A program made the translations under genes and the position numbers. Source: Octopus bimaculoides (taxonomy: Eukaryota). From it: a DNA stretch of 38,206 nucleotides. Shown here piece after piece: positions 8,284-38,206 of the stretch. The notes beneath the pieces were generated by a model. That model did not search any database, was not told the origin of the DNA, and worked only from the letters and a program-made list of their open reading frames with translations. The stretch is taken from the NCBI RefSeq assembly GCF_001194135.2, contig NC_069002.1, positions 27,281,686 through 27,319,891 on the forward strand. Reading direction: 5' to 3'. Every line of letters begins with the position of its first letter. Position 1 is the first letter of the stretch.

Positions 8284-8383
8284 GAAGTAGTAGATAGTTT
8301 CTGTTACCAAGGTGACCCAAGAGGTATCAAGAAGTATTCTAAAGAGGATTTGCTTCTTCTTTGAAATCCCCCAAAACCTTTAA

Positions 8384-8593
8384 CCCTCTAGCATTCAGAT
8401 TACTCTGACAAATGTAATGTTTATTTATTCAAATTGCTTTTAATTAATGACTCATTATCTGGTAGCTTTGAGATTTTGATGATGTAATTGTTTATTTTTA
8501 GAATGGCATTGCTGCATAGGTGTGAGAGGCCAGATCTGGTCAGTTTGAACATAAAACACAGAGCCAGATATGACCAGTTTAAATCCTGAAGGG
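8384..8593. mobile_element. piggyBac-like MITE (CCCTTTAGCATT family)
   Basis: TTAA|CCCTCTAGCATTCAGATTACTCTG...AAATCCTGAAGGG|TTCA; paralogues at about 24715-24862, 26427-26850 and 34630-35058. Confidence 0.7.
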
Positions 8594-19603: not shown

Positions 19604-19741
19604 CTGTGCACATAGCTACAGGTCCTAGTGCACGTGCTAGCGCCCCCAGAGAGCGGAAGACGCCAACAATGGCACCTTTCTGGTTAACTTTGCCGTATCT
19701 TGAGATCAAAGTTGTTAGACATGGCACCACAGTTGCAGAAC
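19604..19741 (-). CDS. MFSD10: MFSD10-like penultimate exon (138 nt)
   Basis: ttaattttag|GT TCT GCA...ATG TGC ACA G|gtaggg = (C)SATVVPCLTTLISRYGKVNQKGAIVGVFRSLGALARALGPVAMCT. Strong match to human VVVPCLSSVVAGYGSPGQKGTVMGTLRSLGALARAAGP. Phase 1 to 1. Confidence 0.93.
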
Positions 19742-22599: not shown

Positions 22600-23420
22600 T
22601 CTTTTCTACTCCAGGCACAAGGCCCGGAATTTTGGGGGAGGAGGCCAATCGATTACATCAGCCTCAGTACGCAACTGGTACTTAACTTATTGACCACAAA
22701 AGGATGAAAGGCAAAGTCGACCTCAGTGGAATTTGAACTCAGGACATAAAGACAGACGAAATACCGCTAAGCATTTCACCCGGCATGATAACGTTTCTTA
22801 TTTCATTATTGCCCACAGTGGGGCTAAACAGAGAAGGGACAAACAAGGACAGACAAAGGGATTAAGTCGATTACATCGACCCCAGTGTGTAACTGGTACT
22901 TAATTTTATCGCCCCCGAAAGGATGAAAGGCAAAGTCGACCGCGGTGGAATTTGAACTCAGAACATAACNNNNNNNNNNNNNNNNNNNNNNNNNNNNNNN
23001 NNNNNNNNNNNNNNNNNNNNNNNNNNNNNNNNNNNNNNNNNNNNNNNNNNNNNNNNNNNNNNNNNNNNNNNNNNNNNNNNNNNNNNNACAAAAGGATGAA
23101 AGGCAAAGTCGACCTCAGTGGAATTTGAACTCAGGACATAAAGACAGACGAAATACCGCTAAGCATTTCACCCGGCATGATAACGTTTCTTATTTCATTA
23201 TTGCCCACAGTGGGGCTAAACAGAGAAGGGACAAACAAGGACAGACAAAGGGATTAAGTCGATTACATCGACCCCAGTGTGTAACTGGTACTTAATTTTA
23301 TCGCCCCCGAAAGGATGAAAGGCAAAGTCGACCGCGGTGGAATTTGAACTCAGAACATAACGGCAGACAAAATACCTCTAAGTATTTCGCCCAGTGTGTT
23401 AACGTTTCTGCCAGCTTACC
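22600..23420 (-). mobile_element. Cluster of family A SINEs, partly duplicated across a gap
   Basis: Repeated AAAGGATGAAAGGCAAAGTCGACC...GAATTTGAACTCAG; 22700-22969 is repeated at 23088-23360. Confidence 0.75.
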
Positions 23421-23573
23421 GCCCTGCACCCAGTACACTCTGTAAAGTGGATGGCGTTAGGGAGGGCAGCCAGACATAGAAACCATGTCAAATCTTGTGA
23501 AACCATCCAACTCAGGCCAGCACGAAACAGGATGTTAAATAATGACATTGATGATGATGACGATGATGATGAA

Positions 23574-24705: not shown

Positions 24706-25856
24706 AAAGGTATCTTGTAACTTTGAGATTCCAAGGGCATGATTGTTTACTTTTAGAATGACATTGTAGGGTGGGTGTGAGATGCCAGATCTGGCTGGTT
24801 TTAACATGAAACAAGTAGAATATATGGGGTGGATTTGGTCAGTTTAAATGCTAAAGGGTTAAGCTGCATCATTAAAGTTAGCTAATTATTCTGTAATTAA
24901 GAAATATGCTAATGTGTTGTCTTCAATCGTTATCAAAAGCAACGATGTTTACAATATGTGATAAATGTTGAACTTTGTTGATGTAAACTTATTATGAACA
25001 TCCAGTTGCTTGATTAATTGGACAAAATTCCGACTGAATTACCTTTCTAACTGGCTGGGTATTCCACAGACATGTGTACCCCTAATGTTATTCTCAGGCA
25101 GAATCAGCATGACACAAGGCTAGGAATTTGAATTACAGGAATGGTTCGTTAGAAAGGCTTCTACACAGTTTCCACCACCACCACCACCACCATCATTTAA
25201 CAACTGTTCTCCATGCTGGCGTGGATTGGATTGTTTGATACAAATTGGCAAAATGAAGGACTGCACAAAGCTTTATTGTCTGTTTTGGTAAAGGCTCTAC
25301 AGCAGGATGCCCTTCCTAGTGCCAACCACTTTACAGAAAGTAATAAGTGCTTTTTCCATTCATGACACCAGCACCAGTGAGGTCACCAAATGACCTGCAA
25401 GATAACACAAAGTTCCCTCAACTGTGGGGGAAGTAGAAATGAGGGGGGTGGCTTTGTGTCAGTTGACGAGAGATTAAAAGAATACTAGAGAGACAGAGGT
25501 GGGTGTCTTTAGGTCGAAGAGATACAAGGAAACCCCACTTGGAGAAGAAGGGAGAGAAAGATAGAGATGGGAAAGGTGGGAGAGATTTGGGGTGGGTATG
25601 TGACAGGGTATACCTTCAAGTTAGGATGATGGGGTGAATACAGGTGAAGTGATACAAAAGATTGGATTGGGGGCAGAAGACAAAGACAGAGGGGTGAATT
25701 TCATAAGAATATGAAGGGAGATGGTTAGAAGGGACAGTTAGTGAAGGTGAGAGATATAGGAGGGCTCAGTGGAAGGTTACGTTAGGTATATGAGGGCATG
25801 CAGAGGGATAGGGGATGAAAGAGGGGTTAAGGATGGAGTATGGCAGAGAAAAAGGA

Positions 25857-26351: not shown

Positions 26352-26426
26352 CTGAAATAAAGAGAAAACAACCAAGAATATATCATTGAAACAAACAAAC
26401 AAAAAAAAAACAAAAAAAACGTTTAA

Positions 26427-26850
26427 CCCTTTAGCATTTAGATTACTCTGTCAAATGTAATCCTTATTTATTCACATTGTTTTGAATTAATCATGGATTA
26501 TCTTGTAGCTGTGAGATGATGATGCAAATGTTTATTTTTGGAATGACAATGTTGGGTGGGCATGAGTGGCCAGATCTGGCCAGTTTGATCATAAAACCGG
26601 TGGAGTATCTGAGATGGATAAGGCTGGTTTAACCCTTTAGCGTTCAGATTATTGTCAAATCTAATTCTTATTTATTCACAAGGTTTTGAATTAATCGTGT
26701 ACTAACTTGTACCTTTGAGATTTTGATGCTGTTATTGTCTATTTATAGAATGGCATTGTAAGGTTGATGTGAAAGGTTAGATCAGGCCAGTCTGAACATA
26801 AAACAGGTAGAATATTTTGGTTGGGTGGGGTCGGCTTACATGCTAAAGTG
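26427..26850. mobile_element. Two tandem piggyBac-like MITEs (CCCTTTAGCATT family) sharing a TTAA
   Basis: TTAA|CCCTTTAGCATTT at 26427 and TTAA|CCCTTTAGCGTT at 26633. Confidence 0.75.
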
Positions 26851-29905: not shown

Positions 29906-30925
29906 TTAATTATTTTCGGTGGGATAATTTACAATGTAAAGTTATCTCCCCTTGCACACAAGCTCAAAGCCTGACATCTAATGGAAGTTACTTCCCTTAG
30001 TATAGTAAGACAACAAACGAACGCCGTCAGTAGGAGAGGTCACGAAGGGAAAGAAGGGAGATGAAATACTATAACTTAATAAATCAATAAGTTAAAAGCA
30101 ATTAATAACAACTACACCGTAACCATGGTGACTGAGATACACCGGGACGTTGACGTTATTTCCCTTGGAGTTATTTTAACCTTAAAGCAGAGCTGTTCCC
30201 GTAAACCAATGGTTAAAGACATTTTAACTGTGACTATCAAATATTTTATTCAGGTATAGTGTATCTCGGAGTACAACATCAAATGTGGGATCTTTTTTAA
30301 AACGGGGGCCACATTTTTCATTAACGAAACACTTTGAAACTTGGAACACTGGTAGAATGTGTCATATAAAACATCTTTTTCTCTTAGTCTTCTTAAAAAA
30401 AAAAGAAATCCATCAGTTATTCCATGTTAAAGATGTCGTATTTCTGTAATTTCAACCAATCACTGACGTCCATTCAGCCGATATACATTAAGTGCCGACT
30501 ACATAAACAAACGATTCTGAAACAGTTAACCCTAACCCTAACTTTAGGGTTAAAGCAAATTTAAAATGAAAAAAGCAAATAAAACGAAGGTATGGAGATT
30601 AAATACGCTTTACATCGCTTAATCAGCCAAAGGAGTAAATATAAACAACTGAATACNNNNNNNNNNNNNNNNNNNNNNNNNNNNNNNNNNNNNNNNNNNN
30701 NNNNNNNNNNNNNNNNNNNNNNNNNNNNNNNNNNNNNNNNNNNNNNNNNNNNNNNNNNNNNNNNNNNNNNNNNNNNNNNNNNNNNNNNNNNNNNNNNNNN
30801 NNNNNNNNNNNNNNNNNNNNNNNNNNNNNNNNNNNNNNNNNNNNNNNNNNNNNNNNNNNNNNNNNNNNNNNNTTGGCTGTTGTTTCTGAAACATTGAGTG
30901 ACTGAATAAAGATGAATTGCAAATA

Positions 30926-31797
30926 CGAGGGTGCATCAAAAAGTAATGCCATTTTCTTTATTTCATGTAAAGGTTTTGATAAAAATAAATGAAAATTTTC
31001 CCAGTTATAAATGATTATATTATTTACGGTCTGGAATATTTTGTTTCTTTACTTTTCAGGTTTTTAGACCGGAAAGGAAAATACAAAATGGCTGCCACCT
31101 TAGAGTTACGTCAAAAGCAAAGAGCAATGATTGAATTTCTTGTTGCTGAGGGGGAAACCCCTGTGAATATTCACCAACGATAACAAAATGTCTTTGAGGA
31201 CAATACTTTAGATTATAGCAATGTATGCAGGTGGGTTCGTCGTCTGAAAGATGAAAAGGTGGGAACTGTGAATGTAGCCGATAAACCCCTTTCTGGCCGT
31301 CCGTCCGCTTCTGTGAATAGCAAAAGCAGACGCTCTGATCAGAGAAGACAGGTACATAACTCTTGATGAGTTGGCAGAAAACCTTGAAGTGAGCCATGGA
31401 AGTGCTTACAACATTGTCGAATCACTTGGCTTTTCAAAAGTCTGTGCCCGTTGGGTACCGAGAGAGCTGACTACCGAACTTGACTGACAGGGTCAATGCC
31501 TGCATTGAACCTCTCGAACAAAGAGGGTTTGAGAGGCAAACATTATTCCAGTGACGAGGAAATGAAAACTGCAGTGAAGAAGTGGCTCAAAGAACAATCA
31601 ACAGAATTTTACGGGGCAGGGATACATACTCTCATTCGAAGGTGGAACATTGCTATTGAGAGAAACAGTGACTATGTTGAGAAGTAGGGATATGATCCAC
31701 AGAGGACCAGCTTCATTTTGATGTATGATACATGTTCCGGTGTCGGTAATTATACCTGTCCTAAACAAAATGGCATTACTTTTTTTACTCACCCTCG
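30926..31797 (+). mobile_element. Mariner transposon, internally deleted (872 bp)
   Basis: TA|CGAGGGTGCATCAAAAAGTAATGCCATTTT ... AAAATGGCATTACTTTTTTTACTCACCCTCG|TA; TIR resembles the Hsmar2-type CGAGGG terminus. Confidence 0.92.
31088..31687 (+). pseudogene. Mariner transposase pseudogene lacking the catalytic core
   Basis: MAATLELRQKQRAMIEFLVAEGETPVNIHQR*...SGRP...VCARWVPRELT joined to KEGLRGKHYSSDEEMKTAVKKWL...DYVEK*; has a stop codon and frameshifts. Confidence 0.9.
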
Positions 31798-32804
31798 TAC
31801 ATTAAGACTTGTGGGACAAAGTTGTGCTGAAAGAAAATAATTAGTCTTTAATCTTATCAATGTATAAGTGTAGGCACAGGCATGTAGGAGCGGTTAAGAA
31901 GTTCAACTCCGAACCATATGGTCCTGGGTTCAGTCCCACCGTGTGGCACCTTCGCCACAGTGTCTTCTAAAGTCCCGGGTCAACCAAAACCATGTGAGTT
32001 AAAGAAGCTCAGCGTGTGTGTGTATATACATATGTATGTATAATTGTGTGTGTGTGTGTATATAAATACGTGTGTATAATGTGAGTGTATATATACGCAC
32101 GTATGTGTGTGTGTGTGTGCATATAAATACGTGTGTGTGCATATAAAATACGTGTGAGTGTACATATACACACATGTATGTATAATGTGTGCCTGTATAT
32201 ACACACATGTATGTATAATATGTGTGCGTGTATATAAATGTGTGTGTATACACACATATATAAACGTGTTGTGCGTTTGTGTACCCTTGTTTTGCGATTA
32301 CGAGAAAGTTGTAAACAAAGCGGCACTGTCATGCAAGCAGAGTCCCTAGTCTCCAATTGTCTACGAAAAAAAAAAAAAAAAAAAAACTTGTCTAGCAATA
32401 GGGAAATATCACCTTGGAAACAGGTGAGTGTTGACGACAAGAAGAGCATCCAGTTGTAGAAAACTGACCTCAACAAATTCCACTTGACTCATGCAAGCAC
32501 GGAAAAGTGGAAGCTAAATGATGGTGATGATGATGATGACGATAATGATGATGCTGATGATAGCAGAGGTGGCGATGATGACGATAGTGGTGATGACAAT
32601 GACAATGATGACATGGTTAGGCCCAGTAAACGTGAGGTGAACTACTGACCATAATACATTTATTTGAAATTTTTTCAAGTTATTGTGTTGTTGTTTTTTG
32701 GTTTGTTTTGTTTGTTTGTTGTTGTTTATTCCCAGATGGTTTGTTTGTTGCTGTTGTTGTTGTTGGTCCATTTGAGAACTCAGCAACCCACCTCTTCTGC
32801 AAAC

Positions 32805-33200
32805 ACTATGCTCTTGTTTCAGTCATTGGACAGCGGCCAAGCTGGGGCACCACCTTAAAGGATTTAATTGAACAAACTGACCCTATCACTTACTTTATAA
32901 GTTTGGTACTTTTTCTATTGGTCTCTTATGCCAAACCGCTACGTTGCAGGGACGTAAACACACCAGTACCAGCTGTTAAGAAGTGATGGAAGACAAACAC
33001 AAAAACACACATACACATATATATGGCGAGCTTCTACACAGTTTCCGTCTACCAAATTCACTCACAAGTCATTGATTAGCCCAAAACTACATTAGATGAC
33101 ACTTGCTCAAGTATCTTCGAGTGTAGTGCTCCGCAGAGGAATTGAACCCAAAGCCACTTGATTACAAAGCAAGCTTTTTAACCACAGTCATGCCTGCACC
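32805..33200 (-). mobile_element. Composite SINE family B
   Basis: Same tail and head motifs as 12643-13025. Confidence 0.75.
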
Positions 33201-33689
33201 TAGAAACATTTTTTTCTTCTCTCTTTGATTCGTTAGAAGGAAGAAGAACAGCTCATGACCTTTGCTGGTCATCCAAGGCCAATGTCTCATAACTATTGTA
33301 GGTGAACACTTGCAGGATAGAGGAAATACATGAGCAAGGATTCCAGAGGGAGTCAATGCTCTGGGGAAGAAGGATTGTGCATAATGGATGGTTAGTGCAG
33401 CACAGGCAGCGTTGGACACAACAGGTGGGTGGAATAGATCAGGAAGATCTGAATAGAGAAAATTGTATGGCATTAGCTAATTCTGAGAAACAGAAGCCAT
33501 GACAATAATGATAGAAATGAGAGAGAGAGGGGAGACAGCATCCCTGTGAACTGAAGGATGGCATGCGTCCGTTTGTGATATAATTGGATGGTTAACTGTA
33601 GGAAGAATATCTAAGTGGAAAACTAATTATCAATAAACTATTCCAATCATCTTAATAAGGAAATTTGAATGTAATACGCAAACACTTAC

Positions 33690-33742
33690 AATACACGCCA
33701 CCTTCTTTTCTTTCCCAAAAGGGACTCGTCTTGTGTAGCTAC
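33690..33742 (-). CDS. MFSD10: MFSD10-like exon (53 nt)
   Basis: tcttctaattccag|GT AGC TAC ACA AGA CGA GTC CCT TTT GGG AAA GAA AAG AAG GTG GCG TGT ATT|gtaagt = (G)SYTRRVPFGKEKKVACI; cf. human GAYARRIHPGGEVAAVKR. Phase 1 to 0, compatible with both neighbouring exons. Confidence 0.88.
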
Positions 33743-34629
33743 CTGGAATTAGAAGATATATCGCAGATGAAAGGACACACAGACAGACAAACATATATAT
33801 ATTTAAACATCAGCAAGAAGAACAGAGTGAACAACTTGTTTTATTGCATAACTCTACAATTGTTTCATCATGTTTCACCAGAAGTCTATAGCCAGATTTT
33901 CAAATGTATCATTAGAGCAATCCATTGTTATTGGATGATAGTTTCTAATAGCTGCTACTTGTGGACAGGCTTTATAAAGTGAACTCCGGTCCACTCTTTA
34001 TCATTTTGCTCACTCAAGGCCCTAATTATCCACAAATTTTGCAGATGCCGCCAATACGCGAAGTTCTCAGTATTATCATTAAAGGCATGAAACTGAGTAT
34101 TACCATTCTGTTGATAACTGATGAAAAATTAGGGCCTTCAGTGTCTGTCCTACTTGTACATTTTTTTAGCTATCATTTATTTAATGCATTTTTCATTTAT
34201 TGGGTAACTGACTTTTGTTAGCAGTAAGTTTTTCATATAAATTTACATATTTATATATATAACATGCTTCTTTCAGTTTCCATTTACCAAATTCTCTCAC
34301 AAGTCAGCCAAGAGGCTATAGTAGAAAACATGTACCCAAGGTACCATGCAGTGTGACTGAACTTGGAACAACATGGGTTGGGAAGTAAACTCCTTAACCA
34401 CACAGCCATATCTGTTCTGGCAAGTATATATATACATATATATACTTTGAGGAACAACATTTGTAGTTTACTCCAGGAGTATGTACCTTGTATGATATAC
34501 AGATATGTTAAAACAGACACCAGAGAGACAAGTGTTTGGCAAGACTTGTGAACTTGCTGTGGGAGGTGGAAAATCAAATGTTTTGGACAAAGTCATTCTT
34601 CAGGAAAAAGTTAACAGCAACAAAATTAA

Positions 34630-35058
34630 CCCTTTTGCATTTAAACCAGCCAAATCTGGCCTAAATATTCCACCTGTTTTATGTTGAAACTGGCCAGACT
34701 CAGCCTCTCATGCCTACCCTTCAATGCCATTCTAAAAGTGGAAATTCACATCATTGAAATCTCAAAGCTGTGAGATAATCCATGATTAATTCAAAACAAT
34801 GTGAATAAATAAGGATTACATTTCACAGAGTAATCTGAATGCTAAGGGTTAAACCAGCTATATCTGAGCCAAATATTCTACCAGCTTTATGTTCAATCAG
34901 ACTAGATCCTGCCTCTCACACCCATCCTATAATGTCATTCTAAAGACACACACTCCCATCGAAATCTTGAAGCTATAAGATAATGTAATAACAATATAAA
35001 ACAACATGAATAAATAAGCATCACATTTGACAGAGTAATTTGATTGCTAAAGAATTAA
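34630..35058. mobile_element. piggyBac-like MITE (34630-34848) plus an adjacent partial copy
   Basis: TTAA|CCCTTTTGCATT...AATGCTAAGGG|TTAA; opposite orientation to the 8384 copy. Confidence 0.75.
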
Positions 35059-35301
35059 AGAGAAACAACAGAGATTTACATCCTTAAAATTAAAATAATT
35101 TGCATCCAGGTTCCCTAATTTAGGGGTTGTAAAACTTTGCAGCCTCTTATTAGTTTCTCTCCTTTCAACTTTTCCACTGAACAAGGATTCTGCCCAAAAC
35201 ACAAGATTTTCCTCTCAGTATGACAAGTTCAAAGTTCTTTCTGTCAATTTTATTACACACGAGTAAATACATTTGTAGTTTAGTCCAGGATAACAACTCA
35301 C

Positions 35302-35357
35302 CTTGTATTAAAGCCATGATACAACCAATGTAAATAAACATAATGCCTTTCTGTAAG
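35302..35357 (-). CDS. MFSD10: MFSD10-like MFS transporter, internal exon (56 nt; first exon visible in window)
   Basis: Minus strand: tttcattttacag|C TTA CAG AAA GGC ATT ATG TTT ATT TAC ATT GGT TGT ATC ATG GCT TTA ATA CAA G|gtgagt = LQKGIMFIYIGCIMALIQG. Matches recalled human MFSD10 LQQGKMFFLIGLTMATIQG. Phase 2 to phase 1. Confidence 0.88.
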
Positions 35358-35417
35358 CTGTAAAATGAAAGTTAAGTTCGTTAGTTTAAAATCAGGTGAT
35401 GGAATTCACAACAACAT

Positions 35418-35558
35418 GTTCGAAAAAATACTTTAGAGACCTGTGAACAAAGACTATGGGGATCAATGGAAGAAGAGTGGGAACGAGAAAGGCAGAAAAT
35501 GTTGAATGCTTTGTTAGGAACAGGACACCAAATGTTGGATTATTCTCAGGAAACTGAG
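35418..35558 (+). pseudogene. NUP93: Orphan NUP93-like exon fragment (47 codons), antisense within an MFSD10 intron
   Basis: VRKNTLETCEQRLWGSMEEEWERERQKMLNALLGTGHQMLDYSQETE followed by GAG|gtaagt. Aligns without gaps to recalled human NUP93 [46 protein letters not shown]. No AG acceptor immediately before the homologous start (aacat|gtt), and there is an in-frame TGA just upstream. Confidence 0.75.
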
Positions 35559-35704
35559 GTAAGTTCTTCTGTGCAATAATGTGCCACACTTTTGAGCTGG
35601 TTGTAGTATTATTGAACATACAAAGGCAACTTCTTTCAAAGGACTGTCTTTTAAATGGCAGATTCATCAATGTTGAAGTGAGACACTATAAAATTTTTAG
35701 TATC

Positions 35705-35880
35705 CTGACCGGCCTTCATGCCGGTGGCACATAAAAGCACCCACTACACTCTCGGAGTGGTTGGCGTTAGGAAGGGCATTCAGATTGGAGCCTGGTGTAG
35801 CCATCTGGTTCCACCAGTCCTCAGTCAAATCGTCCAACCCATGCCAGCATGGAAAGCGGACGTTAAACGATTATGATGAT
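35705..35880 (+). mobile_element. SINE-like repeat (GGTTGGCGTTAGGAAGGGCAT family) with (GAT)n tail
   Basis: Motif recurs at about 13620 (minus), 23450 and 25310 (minus). Confidence 0.7.
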
Positions 35881-36505
35881 GTTATATTAAAAAAAAAAAA
35901 TCAACTCCATTTCCTTCAGTTGCACAAAGAACAAAGAACAACCCTCCTCGCAGTTGAGATCAGCTATCAAACCAACATTAAACTATTAAGCCTTCATGTG
36001 GTGACTCATTCTGAATGTCACACATACCTCATTTTCTTTGGTTGCGCTGCTTTTGCTGATTCCCATGACTCTGTCGCCGTCCAATTCCATTATCAGAAAT
36101 TTGAATTGGGAGCTCAGCTCAGAGTGAATCTTTCATTAGCCGTTTAACACAATCATGGATGCATTGCAGTTACTCTCTTGATAGATCTTGGTGATCCTGA
36201 CCATTGATCTTCTAGGATTCCTCGGCTCAGCATCAATGAAAGAAGCACCGTTGGCTCAGTTGTACTGTTCCACTGCTTCTTCACAATCCACCATGCTGCA
36301 GTCCCATAGCTTCACTGTATCCCTGGCAGGGTAGCTAAATGGATGCTACGCCTTGCCAGAGAGCAGCCCATAACTCTGCAAGGCATGGTCGTCACTCCAT
36401 GAGCGATTTCTTCTGTCTCTATCTTTCTCTCTAATTCCTTCTCTCCTTCCTTTTCCAAATGGGGTATCTCCTCTTCAACAAGACACCTCTCTCTGTCCCT
36501 CTTTT

Positions 36506-37025
36506 ATATGTGACACTTATTTGGTAGCCATGATAAAACTACGAGTTTTGGATGCCAGGGTGGGAGCCCACGCCACCATCTCTTCAGTTATCTGGCCATT
36601 GAAAATTCCTGTGAAAAATGACCATTAAACAAAGGGAAATTACTGTGTAGTTGACCGTTATTAAGACAGAAGAGTTATTAGAATGACTGCTAAGTAAGGG
36701 GAGGGAGTAAAGGTAAGGGAGTAGAGAAGTCTATAGTGTTCATGTAAGCGCACCAATCCATACATTCGCCTATATTTATATACTAAACCACCCTCTCTTG
36801 AAACACACACATGCTCACCCACATTCTTGCCAAAAACTATACATATATGTACATATACATATATGCACCCACATACACACCCACACACACACACATGCAC
36901 ACAACAACCTCGCACCCATACACATGCACGCAAAAAAATTTTATAGGACTGAAAGCAAAAACAGAAGAAAGTGTGGCATCTGAAACTTGGAGTTTTATCA
37001 TGGCTACCGAATAAGTGTCACATAT
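36506..37025. mobile_element. Unclassified TIR element, about 520 bp, TIRs about 43 bp
   Basis: ATATGTGACACTTATTTGGTAGCCATGATAAAACTACGAGTTT versus AAACTTGGAGTTTTATCATGGCTACCGAATAAGTGTCACATAT. Confidence 0.8.
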
Positions 37026-37031
37026 TTTTAC

Positions 37032-37082
<51 letters not shown>

Positions 37083-37085
<3 letters not shown>

Positions 37086-37810
37086 TTTTACTTGTTTCAA
37101 TCATTTGACTGTGTCCATGCTGGAGCACTGCCTTTAGTCAAACAAATCGACCACAGGACTTATTCTTTGCAAGCCTAGTACTTATTCTATCAGTATCTTT
37201 TGCCGAACTGCTAAGTTACAGGGATGTAAACACACCAACATCGGATGTCAAGTGATGGAGGAGATAAATACAGATACACAAACATATATATATATACAAC
37301 GGGCTTCTTTCAGTTTCCATCTACCAAATCCACTCACAAGGCTTTGGTCAGTGTGAGACTAATGTAGAAGACACTTGCCCTGAACCATGTGGTTGGTAAG
37401 CAAGCTACTTACCACACAGCCACTCCTGCGGCTATATATATATCTATATATTATCGTTTACTTGTTTCGGTCATACTGGAGCACTGCCTTGAATGAATCA
37501 ACCCCAGTACTTATATTTCTGGAGCTTGGTATTTATTCAATCCGTCTCTTTTGCCGAAACATTAACTTATGGGGACATAAACACAACAACACCAATTGTC
37601 AAGTGGTGGTGGTGGTGGAGGATAAACACACACACACACACACGTATACGAGTAGCTTCTTTCAGTTTCTGTCGATCATATTCACTCACAAGGCTTTGGT
37701 TAGTCCAAGGCTCTAGTGGCAGTCACTAGCCCAAGGTGCCATGCAGAGGAACTGAACCTGAAACCATGTGGTTAAGAAGCAAACTTCTTACCACACAGCC
37801 ATGCCCATGC
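37083..37810 (-). mobile_element. Two tandem composite family B SINEs (about 37083-37430 and 37445-37810)
   Basis: Each has a TTGTTTC..GTCAT...GCTGGAGCACTGCC tail and a ...AACCATGTGGTT...CTTACCACACAGCC head. Confidence 0.8.
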
Positions 37811-37817
37811 CTACATT

Positions 37818-38206
37818 ATATACATACAAATATACATACACGCATACATACACATACGTACATACATATACATAGATATACATACATATATATATACATA
37901 CATACACATACATACACATACATAGATATACATACATACATATATATATATACATATACATACATATACATACATACATATATATACATAGATATACATA
38001 CATAGATATACATACATACATATATATACATACATACATACATACATATACATACATACATATATATACATACATACATACATATACATACATACATATA
38101 TATACATACATACATACATATACATATATATATACATACACATACATACATATATATATATACATACACATACATACATATATATATATATATACATACA
38201 CATACA
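37818..38206. repeat. (TACA/TA)n compound microsatellite
   Basis: Directly visible to the end of the window. Confidence 0.95.

What the first reader, a model, noticed from the sequence alone, without database searches (positions are those of the whole stretch)
35418..35558. Lone NUP93 exon antisense inside MFSD10, 60 bp from a splice acceptor
Seen: a stop-free 47-codon block ending in a perfect GAG|gtaagt donor, roughly 40 percent identical by eye to recalled human NUP93 around residues 118-163. The donor falls where I recall the human exon ending (QESE). The retained donor shows a DNA-level copy, not a retrocopy. No earlier NUP93 exons were found on the plus strand, and the expected acceptor reads AT, not AG (a weak alternative AG at 35435-36 would give a phase 1 exon). 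Either a captured or duplicated exon fragment was inserted beside the MFSD10 branch region, or a functional NUP93 is interleaved antisense with MFSD10 and its other exons lie in gaps or outside the window.
Basis: partly seen in the sequence, partly recalled or inferred. Interest (0 to 1): 0.75.

Follow-up and report, generated by a model that had tools for sequence, protein, structure and literature searches.

The report
Orphan two-piece NUP93 fragment in MFSD10 intron
A roughly 560-base piece of the nuclear-pore gene NUP93 (one full exon, its intron and part of the next exon) sits backwards inside an intron of the transporter gene MFSD10 in an octopus-like draft genome, and it is most likely an ordinary dead gene fragment, not a working interleaved gene.

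Summary
Bases 35418-35558 (+) encode a stop-free 47-codon block followed by GAG|gtaagt. It is NUP93: the top PDB hits are NUP93 residues 118-163, it is 55-61% identical to invertebrate NUP93 exons, and a profile gives E 4e-16 within the window. The donor sits exactly at a deeply conserved phase-0 intron site. MFSD10 exons lie on the minus strand, and one acceptor is 60 nt away.

Two points change the picture.
- **The exon is not alone.** A second NUP93 piece (35932-35979, QRTTLLAVEISYQTNI) lies 361 nt downstream behind a strong phase-0 acceptor. It is the best of 30,259 six-frame 16-mers.
- **The 5' end looks spliced.** At least 94 of 115 animal NUP93 exon sequences have an intron just before T121. 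Here the DNA reads VRKN-TLE straight through, as mRNAs do. Homology stops there, an in-frame TGA lies 7 codons upstream, and no AG acceptor can include these codons. The second piece also lacks a GT at its conserved end.

No other NUP93 block occurs in the window. The best reading is a short, truncated, non-functional NUP93 fragment (35418-35979). The rivals are a larger partial duplicate, a contig chimera, or a functional interleaved gene. They need the whole assembly or RNA-seq to exclude. Interest is low.

The parts
35397..35399 (+). In-frame TGA, 7 codons upstream of the first NUP93-like codon. It sets the upstream limit of any reading frame that enters the block.
35418..35429 (+). Codons V-R-K-N. 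They match the last residues (A)RKN of the UPSTREAM NUP93 exon as read in mRNAs, yet they are joined directly to the next exon's codons with no intron. NUP93 homology begins here.
   Evidence: coral NUP93 and P0060 read ARKN|TF, while at least 94 of 115 genomic ORFs have an in-frame NAG acceptor at this point. The RKN triplet occurs at 1.6e-4 per position in the window.
35430..35558 (+). Homologue of the conserved NUP93 exon (human T121-E163), 43 codons with no indels: TLETCEQRLWGSMEEEWERERQKMLNALLGTGHQMLDYSQETE.
35435..35438 (+). AGAG: the only AG dinucleotides available as acceptors (35435-36 phase 1, 35437-38 phase 0). Both would cut off the homologous codons RKNTLE, and the upstream tract is A-rich.
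35559..35564 (+). Consensus donor gtaagt at the conserved phase-0 intron position.
35559..35919 (+). Intron-like spacer of 361 nt. It contains an octopus-type dispersed repeat (about 35718-35884) and an A-run (35889-35900), and ends in the strong acceptor tttccttcag (35910-35919).
35920..35979 (+). Second NUP93 piece: LHKE + QRTTLLAVEISYQTNI. It matches the GRSxLDxVEMxYARQ(I/V) block (human residues about 174-189), and its phase-0 start is compatible with the donor at 35558. There is no GT at the conserved exon end (35976|35977 reads AAC|ATTAAA), and homology stops here.
   Evidence: rank 1 of 30,259 16-mers, score 23.0 against 15.6 for the runner-up.; the tail is not NUP93-like; only weak support by the HMM and shuffle test.
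35302..35357 (-). MFSD10-like exon A (SLQKGIMFIYIGCIMALIQ-, human residues about 305-323). The acceptor ttttacag ends at 35358, a ctaac branch-like motif lies at 35384-35380, and the donor is CAAG|gtgagt.
33690..33742 (-). MFSD10-like exon B (GSYTRRVPFGKEKKVACI), with ttccag|..|gtaagt splice signals.
19604..19741 (-). MFSD10-like exon C (human residues about 370-415), with ttttag|..|gtaggg splice signals.

Best explanation
Bases 35418-35979 are a short, non-functional relic of NUP93 lying antisense in the MFSD10 intron that precedes exon A.

**Content of the fragment**
- the last 3-4 codons of one NUP93 exon, fused without an intron to the whole next exon (human T121-E163);
- that exon's own downstream intron, with consensus GT and AG signals, later invaded by an octopus dispersed repeat;
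- the first 20 codons of the following exon.

Both ends are breakpoints, not splice sites. At the 5' end homology stops inside coding sequence, with no AG acceptor and an in-frame stop just upstream. At the 3' end homology stops at the conserved exon end, where no GT is present.

**Origin (inferred, not shown).** Most likely a small piece of genomic DNA was copied from the organism's real NUP93 locus into this intron, for example as filler during break repair or as part of a small segmental duplication. The parent gene, like the Tara plankton genomic ORF P0089, would lack the otherwise widespread intron before T121.

**Function (inferred).** The fragment is not expected to contribute to nuclear-pore protein. 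Its only plausible activity is passive: the MFSD10 pre-mRNA carries about 200 nt complementary to NUP93 mRNA.

**Shown versus inferred.** Shown: the homology, its limits, the splice signals and the position relative to MFSD10. Inferred: that an intact NUP93 lies elsewhere, the copying mechanism and the lack of function.
For: **NUP93 identity**
- PDB top hits are NUP93 residues 118-163.
- The profile search gave 139 NUP93 exon or transcript hits, and the block is 55-61% identical to invertebrate exons.
- The profile scores only this block in the window, E 4e-16.

**Structure of the fragment**
- The donor sits at the conserved phase-0 site.
- The second piece is rank 1 of 30,259 16-mers, lies 361 nt downstream on the same strand, and follows tttccttcag in a compatible phase.

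**The 5' junction is mRNA-like**
- The window reads VRKN|TLE against ARKN|TF in coral NUP93 and P0060.
- 87 ORFs read Q|TF and 7 read K|TF, which places an intron there.
- The chance of RKN at that position is 1.6e-4.

**The block cannot be spliced as a whole**
- AG dinucleotides occur only at 35383, 35394, 35435 and 35437, and a TGA lies at 35397-99.
- The second piece has no GT at its conserved end, and its tail is not NUP93-like (p 0.28-1.0).

**Nothing else in the window**
- No outlier for six other conserved NUP93 blocks on either strand, and no other tblastn or HMM hit.

**Context**
- The fragment and MFSD10 exons A and B lie on one gap-free contig, 30873-38206.
- An intron-less N-1/N junction exists in nature (P0089 from a Tara metagenome scaffold).
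Against: - No intact NUP93 locus could be examined. The tools hold no cephalopod genome or NUP93, so 'orphan' is an inference.
- Both reading frames are still open (59 and 148 stop-free codons). The GT..AG pair of the internal intron is intact and phase-compatible. Exon identity to the invertebrate consensus is high (about 71% by eye). This fits a young copy, but it also fits a live gene.
- Octopus introns can exceed the 35 kb of upstream sequence available, and 3.5 kb of the window is N.
- A phase-0 donor-like GTG|GTGACT at 36000/36001 could in principle serve the second exon.
- By the HMM and shuffle test the second piece adds only +5.2 bits, against +2.9 +/- 1.3 for shuffles.
- No target-site duplication, poly(A) tail or transposon termini mark an insertion.
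Confidence: 0.5

Rival explanations
1. Semi-processed retrocopy. The fragment was reverse-transcribed from a partly spliced NUP93 pre-mRNA in which the upstream intron had been removed and the next intron retained. It was 5'-truncated on insertion, and again it is non-functional.
For: - The N-1|N junction is intron-less and reads as mRNAs do (VRKN|T), while nearly all animal genomic ORFs have an intron there.
- The abrupt 5' end inside coding sequence resembles 5' truncation.
Against: - No poly(A) tail follows the 3' end of homology at 35979. The only A-run (35889-35900) lies inside the retained intron.
- There is no target-site duplication.
- The copy ends after one more exon and does not run on to the transcript's 3' end.
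- An intron-less junction can also be inherited from a parent gene that lost the intron, as in P0089.
Confidence: 0.15
2. A larger 5'-truncated partial duplicate (pseudogene) of NUP93 begins at 35418 and continues rightwards beyond the window end, with long introns.
For: - Two consecutive pieces lie in the correct order, strand and phase.
- Only 2.2 kb of sequence remains after the second piece, and MFSD10 introns in this window are about 1.6 kb (A to B) and up to about 14 kb (B to C).
- A possible phase-0 donor GTG|GTGACT lies at 36000/36001.
Against: - That donor would add 7-8 unrelated residues inside the strongly conserved YARQ-IYxYNE stretch.
- No GT sits at the conserved exon end.
- No further NUP93 block lies in 35980-38206.
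Confidence: 0.12
3. Assembly chimera. The contig wrongly joins the MFSD10 intron to the real NUP93 locus somewhere in 35358-35418, so these would be genuine NUP93 exons cut off by a false join.
For: - This is a draft assembly with 11 gaps.
- It shows a clear gap-flanking artefact: 22696-22969 is 100% identical to 23088-23361 across the gap at 22970-23087.
- Both reading frames are open and the internal intron signals are intact.
- A false join would explain the abrupt 5' end and the absence of upstream exons.
Against: - There is no N and no repeat at the putative junction, and 35060-35700 is unique in the window.
- The missing donor and conserved continuation after the second piece remain unexplained.
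Confidence: 0.1
4. A functional NUP93 gene is interleaved antisense with MFSD10. Its upstream exons would lie more than 35 kb away or in gaps, and this exon would be joined through a non-canonical acceptor between 35400 and 35420.
For: - The exon is well conserved and its frame is open.
- The donor is perfect and sits at the conserved site.
- The downstream acceptor is phase-compatible and strong.
Against: - No AG lies between the in-frame TGA (35397-99) and the homologous codons.
- There is no polypyrimidine tract.
- No U12 branch or 5'ss motif is suitably placed.
- The available AGs at 35435-38 would delete the conserved TF(L)E start, and would leave the coding-like RKNTLE stretch as intron.
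- No N-terminal NUP93 block is present in the window.
- The second exon lacks a donor at its conserved end.
Confidence: 0.05
5. Chance similarity in an open reading frame.
For: The single-query PDB E-value is only about 1e-3. Multiplied over roughly 900 six-frame segments, that alone would not be decisive.
Against: - The profile gives E 4e-16 within the window.
- The block is 59% identical to P0060 over 49 aa.
- The alignment has no indels and ends exactly on a consensus donor at the conserved intron site.
- The next NUP93 block follows in order.
Confidence: 0.01

Closest known systems
Unprocessed (duplicated) pseudogene fragments: gene-fragment relics inside introns of other genes
   Same: - Partial copy of a multi-exon gene that keeps an intron with GT..AG signals.
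- Breakpoints fall inside coding sequence.
- No way to be spliced into a full transcript.
- Sits in a repeat-rich intron.
   Different: - One deeply conserved intron (before T121) is missing from the copy.
- The parent locus was not available, so neither divergence nor duplication size could be measured.
Semi-processed retrogenes and retropseudogenes (classic example from my own knowledge: rodent Ins1, derived from a partly spliced pre-mRNA that kept one intron)
   Same: One intron is removed precisely and the neighbouring intron is retained. The 5' end is truncated.
   Different: No poly(A) tail at the 3' end, no target-site duplication, and only about two exons long.
Transposon-mediated gene-fragment capture (Pack-MULE or Helitron type)
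   Same: A small exon-plus-intron fragment of a host gene at an ectopic site in a transposon-rich genome.
   Different: No terminal inverted repeats, hairpin or element termini flank 35418-35979. The only repeat lies inside the fragment's intron.
Interleaved or nested antisense gene pairs
   Same: An exon of one gene lies in an intron of a gene on the other strand.
   Different: Here the 'exon' has no usable acceptor, and no further exons of the gene are present in 35 kb.

Membership tests
NUP93/Nic96 nucleoporin (sequence homology of the fragment) | Significant, collinear similarity to bona fide NUP93 proteins | tested here: met
   - PDB NUP93 residues 118-163 are the top hits.
- 139 NUP93 hits with the profile, including Stylophora NUP93 and Pfam-Nic96-bearing transcripts.
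- HMM E 4e-16.
NUP93/Nic96 nucleoporin (sequence homology of the fragment) | Presence of the Nic96 domain (PF04097), the alpha-solenoid body of the protein | tested here: not met
   - No Pfam hit for the block.
- No LGGVPG or CLRCGD blocks anywhere in the window.
- The fragment covers only the N-terminal linker region, upstream of the domain.
Functional internal coding exon | Canonical AG acceptor (with pyrimidine tract) upstream of all homologous codons | tested here: not met
   AG dinucleotides occur only at 35383, 35394, 35435 and 35437. An in-frame TGA lies at 35397-99, and the upstream tract is A-rich.
Functional internal coding exon | GT donor at the conserved intron position, and an open frame | tested here: met
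   - First piece: GAG|gtaagt at 35558/59, with 47-59 stop-free codons.
- Second piece: no GT at 35976/77.
Functional internal coding exon | Neighbouring exons of the same gene present in order | tested here: inconclusive
   The next exon piece is present. Upstream exons and later exons are absent from the window, but only 2.2 kb lies downstream and 3.5 kb of the window is gaps.
Processed or semi-processed retrocopy | Precise absence of introns | tested here: inconclusive
   The intron before T121 is absent. The next intron is present.
Processed or semi-processed retrocopy | 3' poly(A) tract and flanking target-site duplication | tested here: not met
   No A-tail follows 35979, and only a 7-nt shared word was found between the flanks.
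Unprocessed duplicated pseudogene fragment | Retains parental intron(s), and has disabling features | tested here: met
   - The GT..AG intron at 35559-35919 is retained.
- There is no acceptor for the first piece, no donor at the conserved end of the second piece, and truncation at both ends.
Unprocessed duplicated pseudogene fragment | An intact parent locus elsewhere in the same genome | not testable with these tools
   - No cephalopod genome or NUP93 is in the accessible collections.
- The peptide search found nothing and the metagenome scan found nothing.
MFSD10 (host gene, minus strand) | Specific similarity to MFSD10, and spliceable exons | tested here: met
   - PDB 6s4m_A (MFSD10) is the only significant hit, E 5e-15, over residues 305-342 and 370-415.
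- All three exons have AG..GT signals.
- MFS_1 gives only a weak hit, E 0.0086.
Transposon-captured gene fragment | Element termini (TIRs or a hairpin) flanking the fragment | tested here: not met
   Only short, chance-level inverted and direct repeats were found.

The most novel reading that the evidence does not exclude
These could be the genuine NUP93 exons of this octopus. In that case NUP93 and MFSD10 would be truly interleaved on opposite strands, and the NUP93 exon would be joined through a non-AG acceptor or another unusual mechanism. A weaker variant is that the dead fragment is retained because the MFSD10 pre-mRNA then carries about 200 nt antisense to NUP93 mRNA, giving a trans double-stranded RNA substrate for the very active cephalopod A-to-I editing or small-RNA machinery.
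Probability: 0.05. Interest if true: 0.6.

Novelty: new member of a known kind. Interest (0 to 1): 0.2.

Why it matters
Mostly for annotation.
- A gene finder or a homology-based pipeline could call a spurious 'NUP93-like' gene here, or build a chimeric model.
- The fragment lies within about 35-60 nt of the MFSD10 branch site and acceptor, so it marks how close to a splice signal an insertion can be tolerated.
- The intron-less VRKN|TLE junction gives a testable prediction: either octopus NUP93 has lost an intron that at least 94 of 115 sampled animal NUP93 sequences retain, or the fragment passed through an RNA intermediate.

If the fragment is instead the real gene, it would be an unusual interleaved pair with non-canonical splicing of an essential nucleoporin.

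Tried and rejected
- **Protein search with the 47-aa peptide:** no candidate. That database holds mostly prokaryote-style ORF calls, with few annotated full-length animal proteins, so a search with the human fragment returned only single-exon ORFs. Those ORFs turned out to be useful for locating intron positions.
- **Pfam on raw frames:** Pfam on concatenated stop-free segments of the minus strand, 37.7-21.7 kb, gave no hits, because single exons are too short.
- **Weak minus-strand NUP93-like hit at 27016-26960** (PLEFPANIDLQGFMKNLND, residues 89-107, E 0.13-0.9). It drops to E 7.6 with a profile, is not an outlier in the block scan (z 4.1 against 4.0 for the runner-up), has no NALLSAIEE continuation and no donor. 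Treated as chance.
- **MFSD10-like hit at 26162-26124** (E 0.81). It is out of order and resembles the dispersed repeat, so it was treated as chance.
- **Continuation of NUP93 after 35979:** not significant against six references.
- **Insertion hallmarks:** target-site duplications around 35418 and 35900, and around the repeat, were not found. No terminal inverted repeats.
- **U12-type signals:** none placed to serve the block.
- **Rfam and tRNA scans:** nothing.
- **PDB search with the spliced two-piece peptide:** the alignment did not extend into the second piece. The HMM and shuffle test gives it only weak support.
- **Literature search for a NUP93-MFSD10 link:** nothing relevant.

Full report
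**Setting.** The window is a draft eukaryotic scaffold of 38,206 bases with 11 runs of N totalling 3,512 bases. It is AT-rich and full of microsatellites and dispersed repeats. One repeat inside the region of interest (35719-35841) shares a 20-residue exact stretch with a repeat-derived 'hypothetical protein' of Octopus vulgaris. That was the only database hit for the 148-codon frame 35701-36144, so the window very probably comes from an octopus or a close relative. The assembly has visible artefacts: 22696-22969 is 100% identical to 23088-23361 across the gap at 22970-23087.

**The observation.** Bases 35418-35558 (+) read VRKNTLETCEQRLWGSMEEEWERERQKMLNALLGTGHQMLDYSQETE without a stop, followed by gtaagt. 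The evidence that this is NUP93:
- phmmer against all PDB chains puts Xenopus and human NUP93, residues 118-163, first (E 0.0011 and 0.0014), and the next hits have E above 1.
tblastn with it is therefore valid. It finds only this block (41.7% identity over 48 aa, E 1.2e-5), and everything else has E of 0.9 or more.

On its own, E of about 1e-3 for one of roughly 900 six-frame segments would not be decisive. I therefore built a profile from the block plus vertebrate exon ORFs (A1) and searched 1.84 billion representative proteins. That search gave 139 hits. They include full-length NUP93 from the coral Stylophora pistillata (named), Tara metatranscriptome NUP93s bearing the Pfam Nic96 domain, and dozens of single-exon genomic ORFs. 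The block is 55-61% identical to many invertebrate exons, for example 59% over 49 aa to P0060. An HMM of eight real NUP93 sequences, run against all 1,512 six-frame segments of the window, scores only this block (E 4e-16; next best E 4.4). Chance is excluded.

**Exon boundaries in other animals.** The genomic ORFs give the intron positions directly.
- All exon ORFs end ...E|V.., which is a GT donor straight after the residue aligned with window E47.
- At the 5' side, 87 of 115 sequences read ..Q|TF and 7 read ..K|TF. That is an in-frame NAG acceptor immediately before human T121.
- The 17 mRNA-like sequences read (E)(A/S/T)(R/K)(K/R)x|TF there. Coral NUP93 and P0060 read ARKN|TF.
- The window's DNA reads VRKN-TLE straight through. 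The conserved acceptor position (35428-29) is the AT of an AAT codon, and the three preceding codons are exactly the RKN that other animals encode in the upstream exon.
- RKN occurs at 1.6e-4 per position in this window.

So the copy is 'spliced' at this junction. Upstream of V (35418) homology ends (WNSQQH against LSAIEQ), and an in-frame TGA lies at 35397-99. The only AG dinucleotides between 35380 and 35445 are at 35383, 35394, 35435 and 35437. No canonical acceptor can bring the homologous codons into a transcript. The two AGs at 35435-38 would discard RKNTLE, including the near-invariant TF/TL start, and they sit behind an A-rich tract. No U12-type motifs are placed to help.

**A second piece.** tblastn with P0060 and the HMM gave a weak + strand hit at 35929-35979. 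I scored every stop-free 16-mer in all six frames against the conserved block GRSxLDxVEMxYARQ(I/V) from eight NUP93s.
- QRTTLLAVEISYQTNI at 35932 is rank 1 of 30,259, with mean BLOSUM62 score 23.0 against 15.6 for the runner-up.
- It lies 361 nt downstream of the donor, on the same strand and in the right order.
- It is preceded by tttccttcag| at 35910-35919, so an exon starting at 35920 is in phase 0, matching the phase-0 donor at 35558.
- From the tail of the score distribution I estimate roughly 1e-3 for such a match anywhere in the 2.6 kb downstream, before counting the acceptor.
- A more flexible HMM and shuffle test is only weakly supportive: +5.2 bits against +2.9 +/- 1.3. A PDB search with the spliced peptide did not extend into this piece.

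I regard the piece as probable, not certain. Homology stops at 35979. The conserved exon end reads AAC|ATTAAA with no GT. The in-frame tail is not NUP93-like (p 0.28-1.0 against six references), and no IYxYNE, DMW, LGGVPG or CLRCGD block is found anywhere in the window. The N-terminal blocks (FLKNERENA.., VKAS.., VERNL.., the N-terminus) also have no outlier on either strand. The minus-strand hit at 27016-26960 is chance-level.

**Context.** On the minus strand, three exons with good AG..GT signals match MFSD10: A at 35357-35302, B at 33742-33690 and C at 19741-19604. PDB 6s4m_A (MFSD10) is the only significant hit (E 5e-15), covering residues 305-342 and 370-415. Exon A's acceptor is 60 nt from 35418, with a ctaac branch-like motif at 35384-35380. 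The NUP93 fragment therefore lies in the MFSD10 intron upstream of exon A, just beyond its branch and pyrimidine region. The fragment and exons A and B share one gap-free contig (30873-38206), and 35060-35700 is unique in the window.

**Interpretation.** The simplest account of all these features is a short (about 560 bp), doubly truncated, non-functional NUP93 fragment. The features are:
- an intact internal intron;
- an intron-less 5' junction;
- abrupt ends at both sides;
- no acceptor and no terminal donor;
- no other NUP93 blocks in the window.

Its origin is inferred. The first possibility is a DNA copy from a parent NUP93 that lacks the intron before T121. Such a structure exists in nature: the Tara metagenome ORF P0089 reads ..EQARKNTFEE.. 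contiguously behind its own upstream acceptor. The second possibility is a partly spliced RNA intermediate, but poly(A) and target-site duplications are absent. No transposon termini flank the fragment.

The still-open frames and the good conservation mean the copy is either young or not dead. That is why three rivals remain: a larger partial duplicate running off the window, a chimeric contig carrying real NUP93 exons, and a truly interleaved functional gene using a non-AG acceptor. None of them explains the missing donor and the missing continuation after the second piece as well. None can be excluded without the rest of the genome or transcript data, and the accessible collections hold no cephalopod NUP93.

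**Verdict.** The 'lone exon' and 'DNA-level, not retrocopy' statements need amending. This is a new instance of a familiar kind of object, a gene-fragment pseudogene in an intron. Its interest is low apart from the neat intron-less junction and its relevance to annotation.

Noticed in passing
window 22696-22969 and 23088-23361: These 274 bases are 100% identical on both sides of the N gap at 22970-23087. This is a typical gap-flanking duplication artefact of a draft assembly, and a reason for caution about local assembly correctness.
   Followed up: yes
window about 31080-31684 (+): Frameshifted remnant of a mariner/Mos1-type transposase. It keeps the N-terminal HTH_48 domain (Pfam E 3.2e-5) and a C-terminal ...RWNIAIERNSDYVEK end, with the catalytic middle missing.
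   Followed up: partly
window 35718-35884 (+), with related copies at 23426-23556 (+), 25192-25330 (-) and 32487-32532: A dispersed SINE-like repeat lies inside the NUP93-like intron. Its translation shares CRWHIKAPTTLSEWLALGRA exactly with an Octopus vulgaris 'hypothetical protein', which points to an octopus origin for the window.
   Followed up: partly
window 27016-26960 (-): PLEFPANIDLQGFMKNLND resembles NUP93 residues 89-107 (DIQGFLKNE motif), the segment just before the fragment, but it lies on the opposite strand 8.4 kb away. E is 0.13-0.9, there is no continuation and no donor, and it is not an outlier in the block scan. Probably chance, though it is a curious coincidence.
   Followed up: partly
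window 33689-19742 (-) and below 19604: The MFSD10 exons for human residues about 343-369 and about 416-451 were not found. The 14-kb interval between exons B and C holds two N gaps (30657-30872 and 22970-23087) and the artefact noted above, so an exon may be hidden or the order of contigs may be wrong.
   Followed up: no
window 35395-35685 (-) and 35701-36144 (+): Two unusually long stop-free frames for this AT-rich sequence. One of 97 codons runs antisense across the NUP93 exon. One of 148 codons runs through the repeat, the second NUP93 piece and 55 further codons. Neither has a recognisable family beyond what is reported above.
   Followed up: partly
window 34641-35060 (+), related to 26421-26817 (-), 8378-8555 (-) and 24711-24827 (-): Two tandem copies of a dispersed repeat of about 200 bp (74-75% identical between copies) lie downstream (3') of the donor of MFSD10 exon A.
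   Followed up: no
window 36139-36503 (-): Several overlapping stop-free frames look like a decayed transposon coding region just downstream of the fragment (e.g. KRDRERCLVEEEIPHLEKEGEKELERKIETEEIAHGVTTMPCRV..). They have no Pfam hit.
   Followed up: partly
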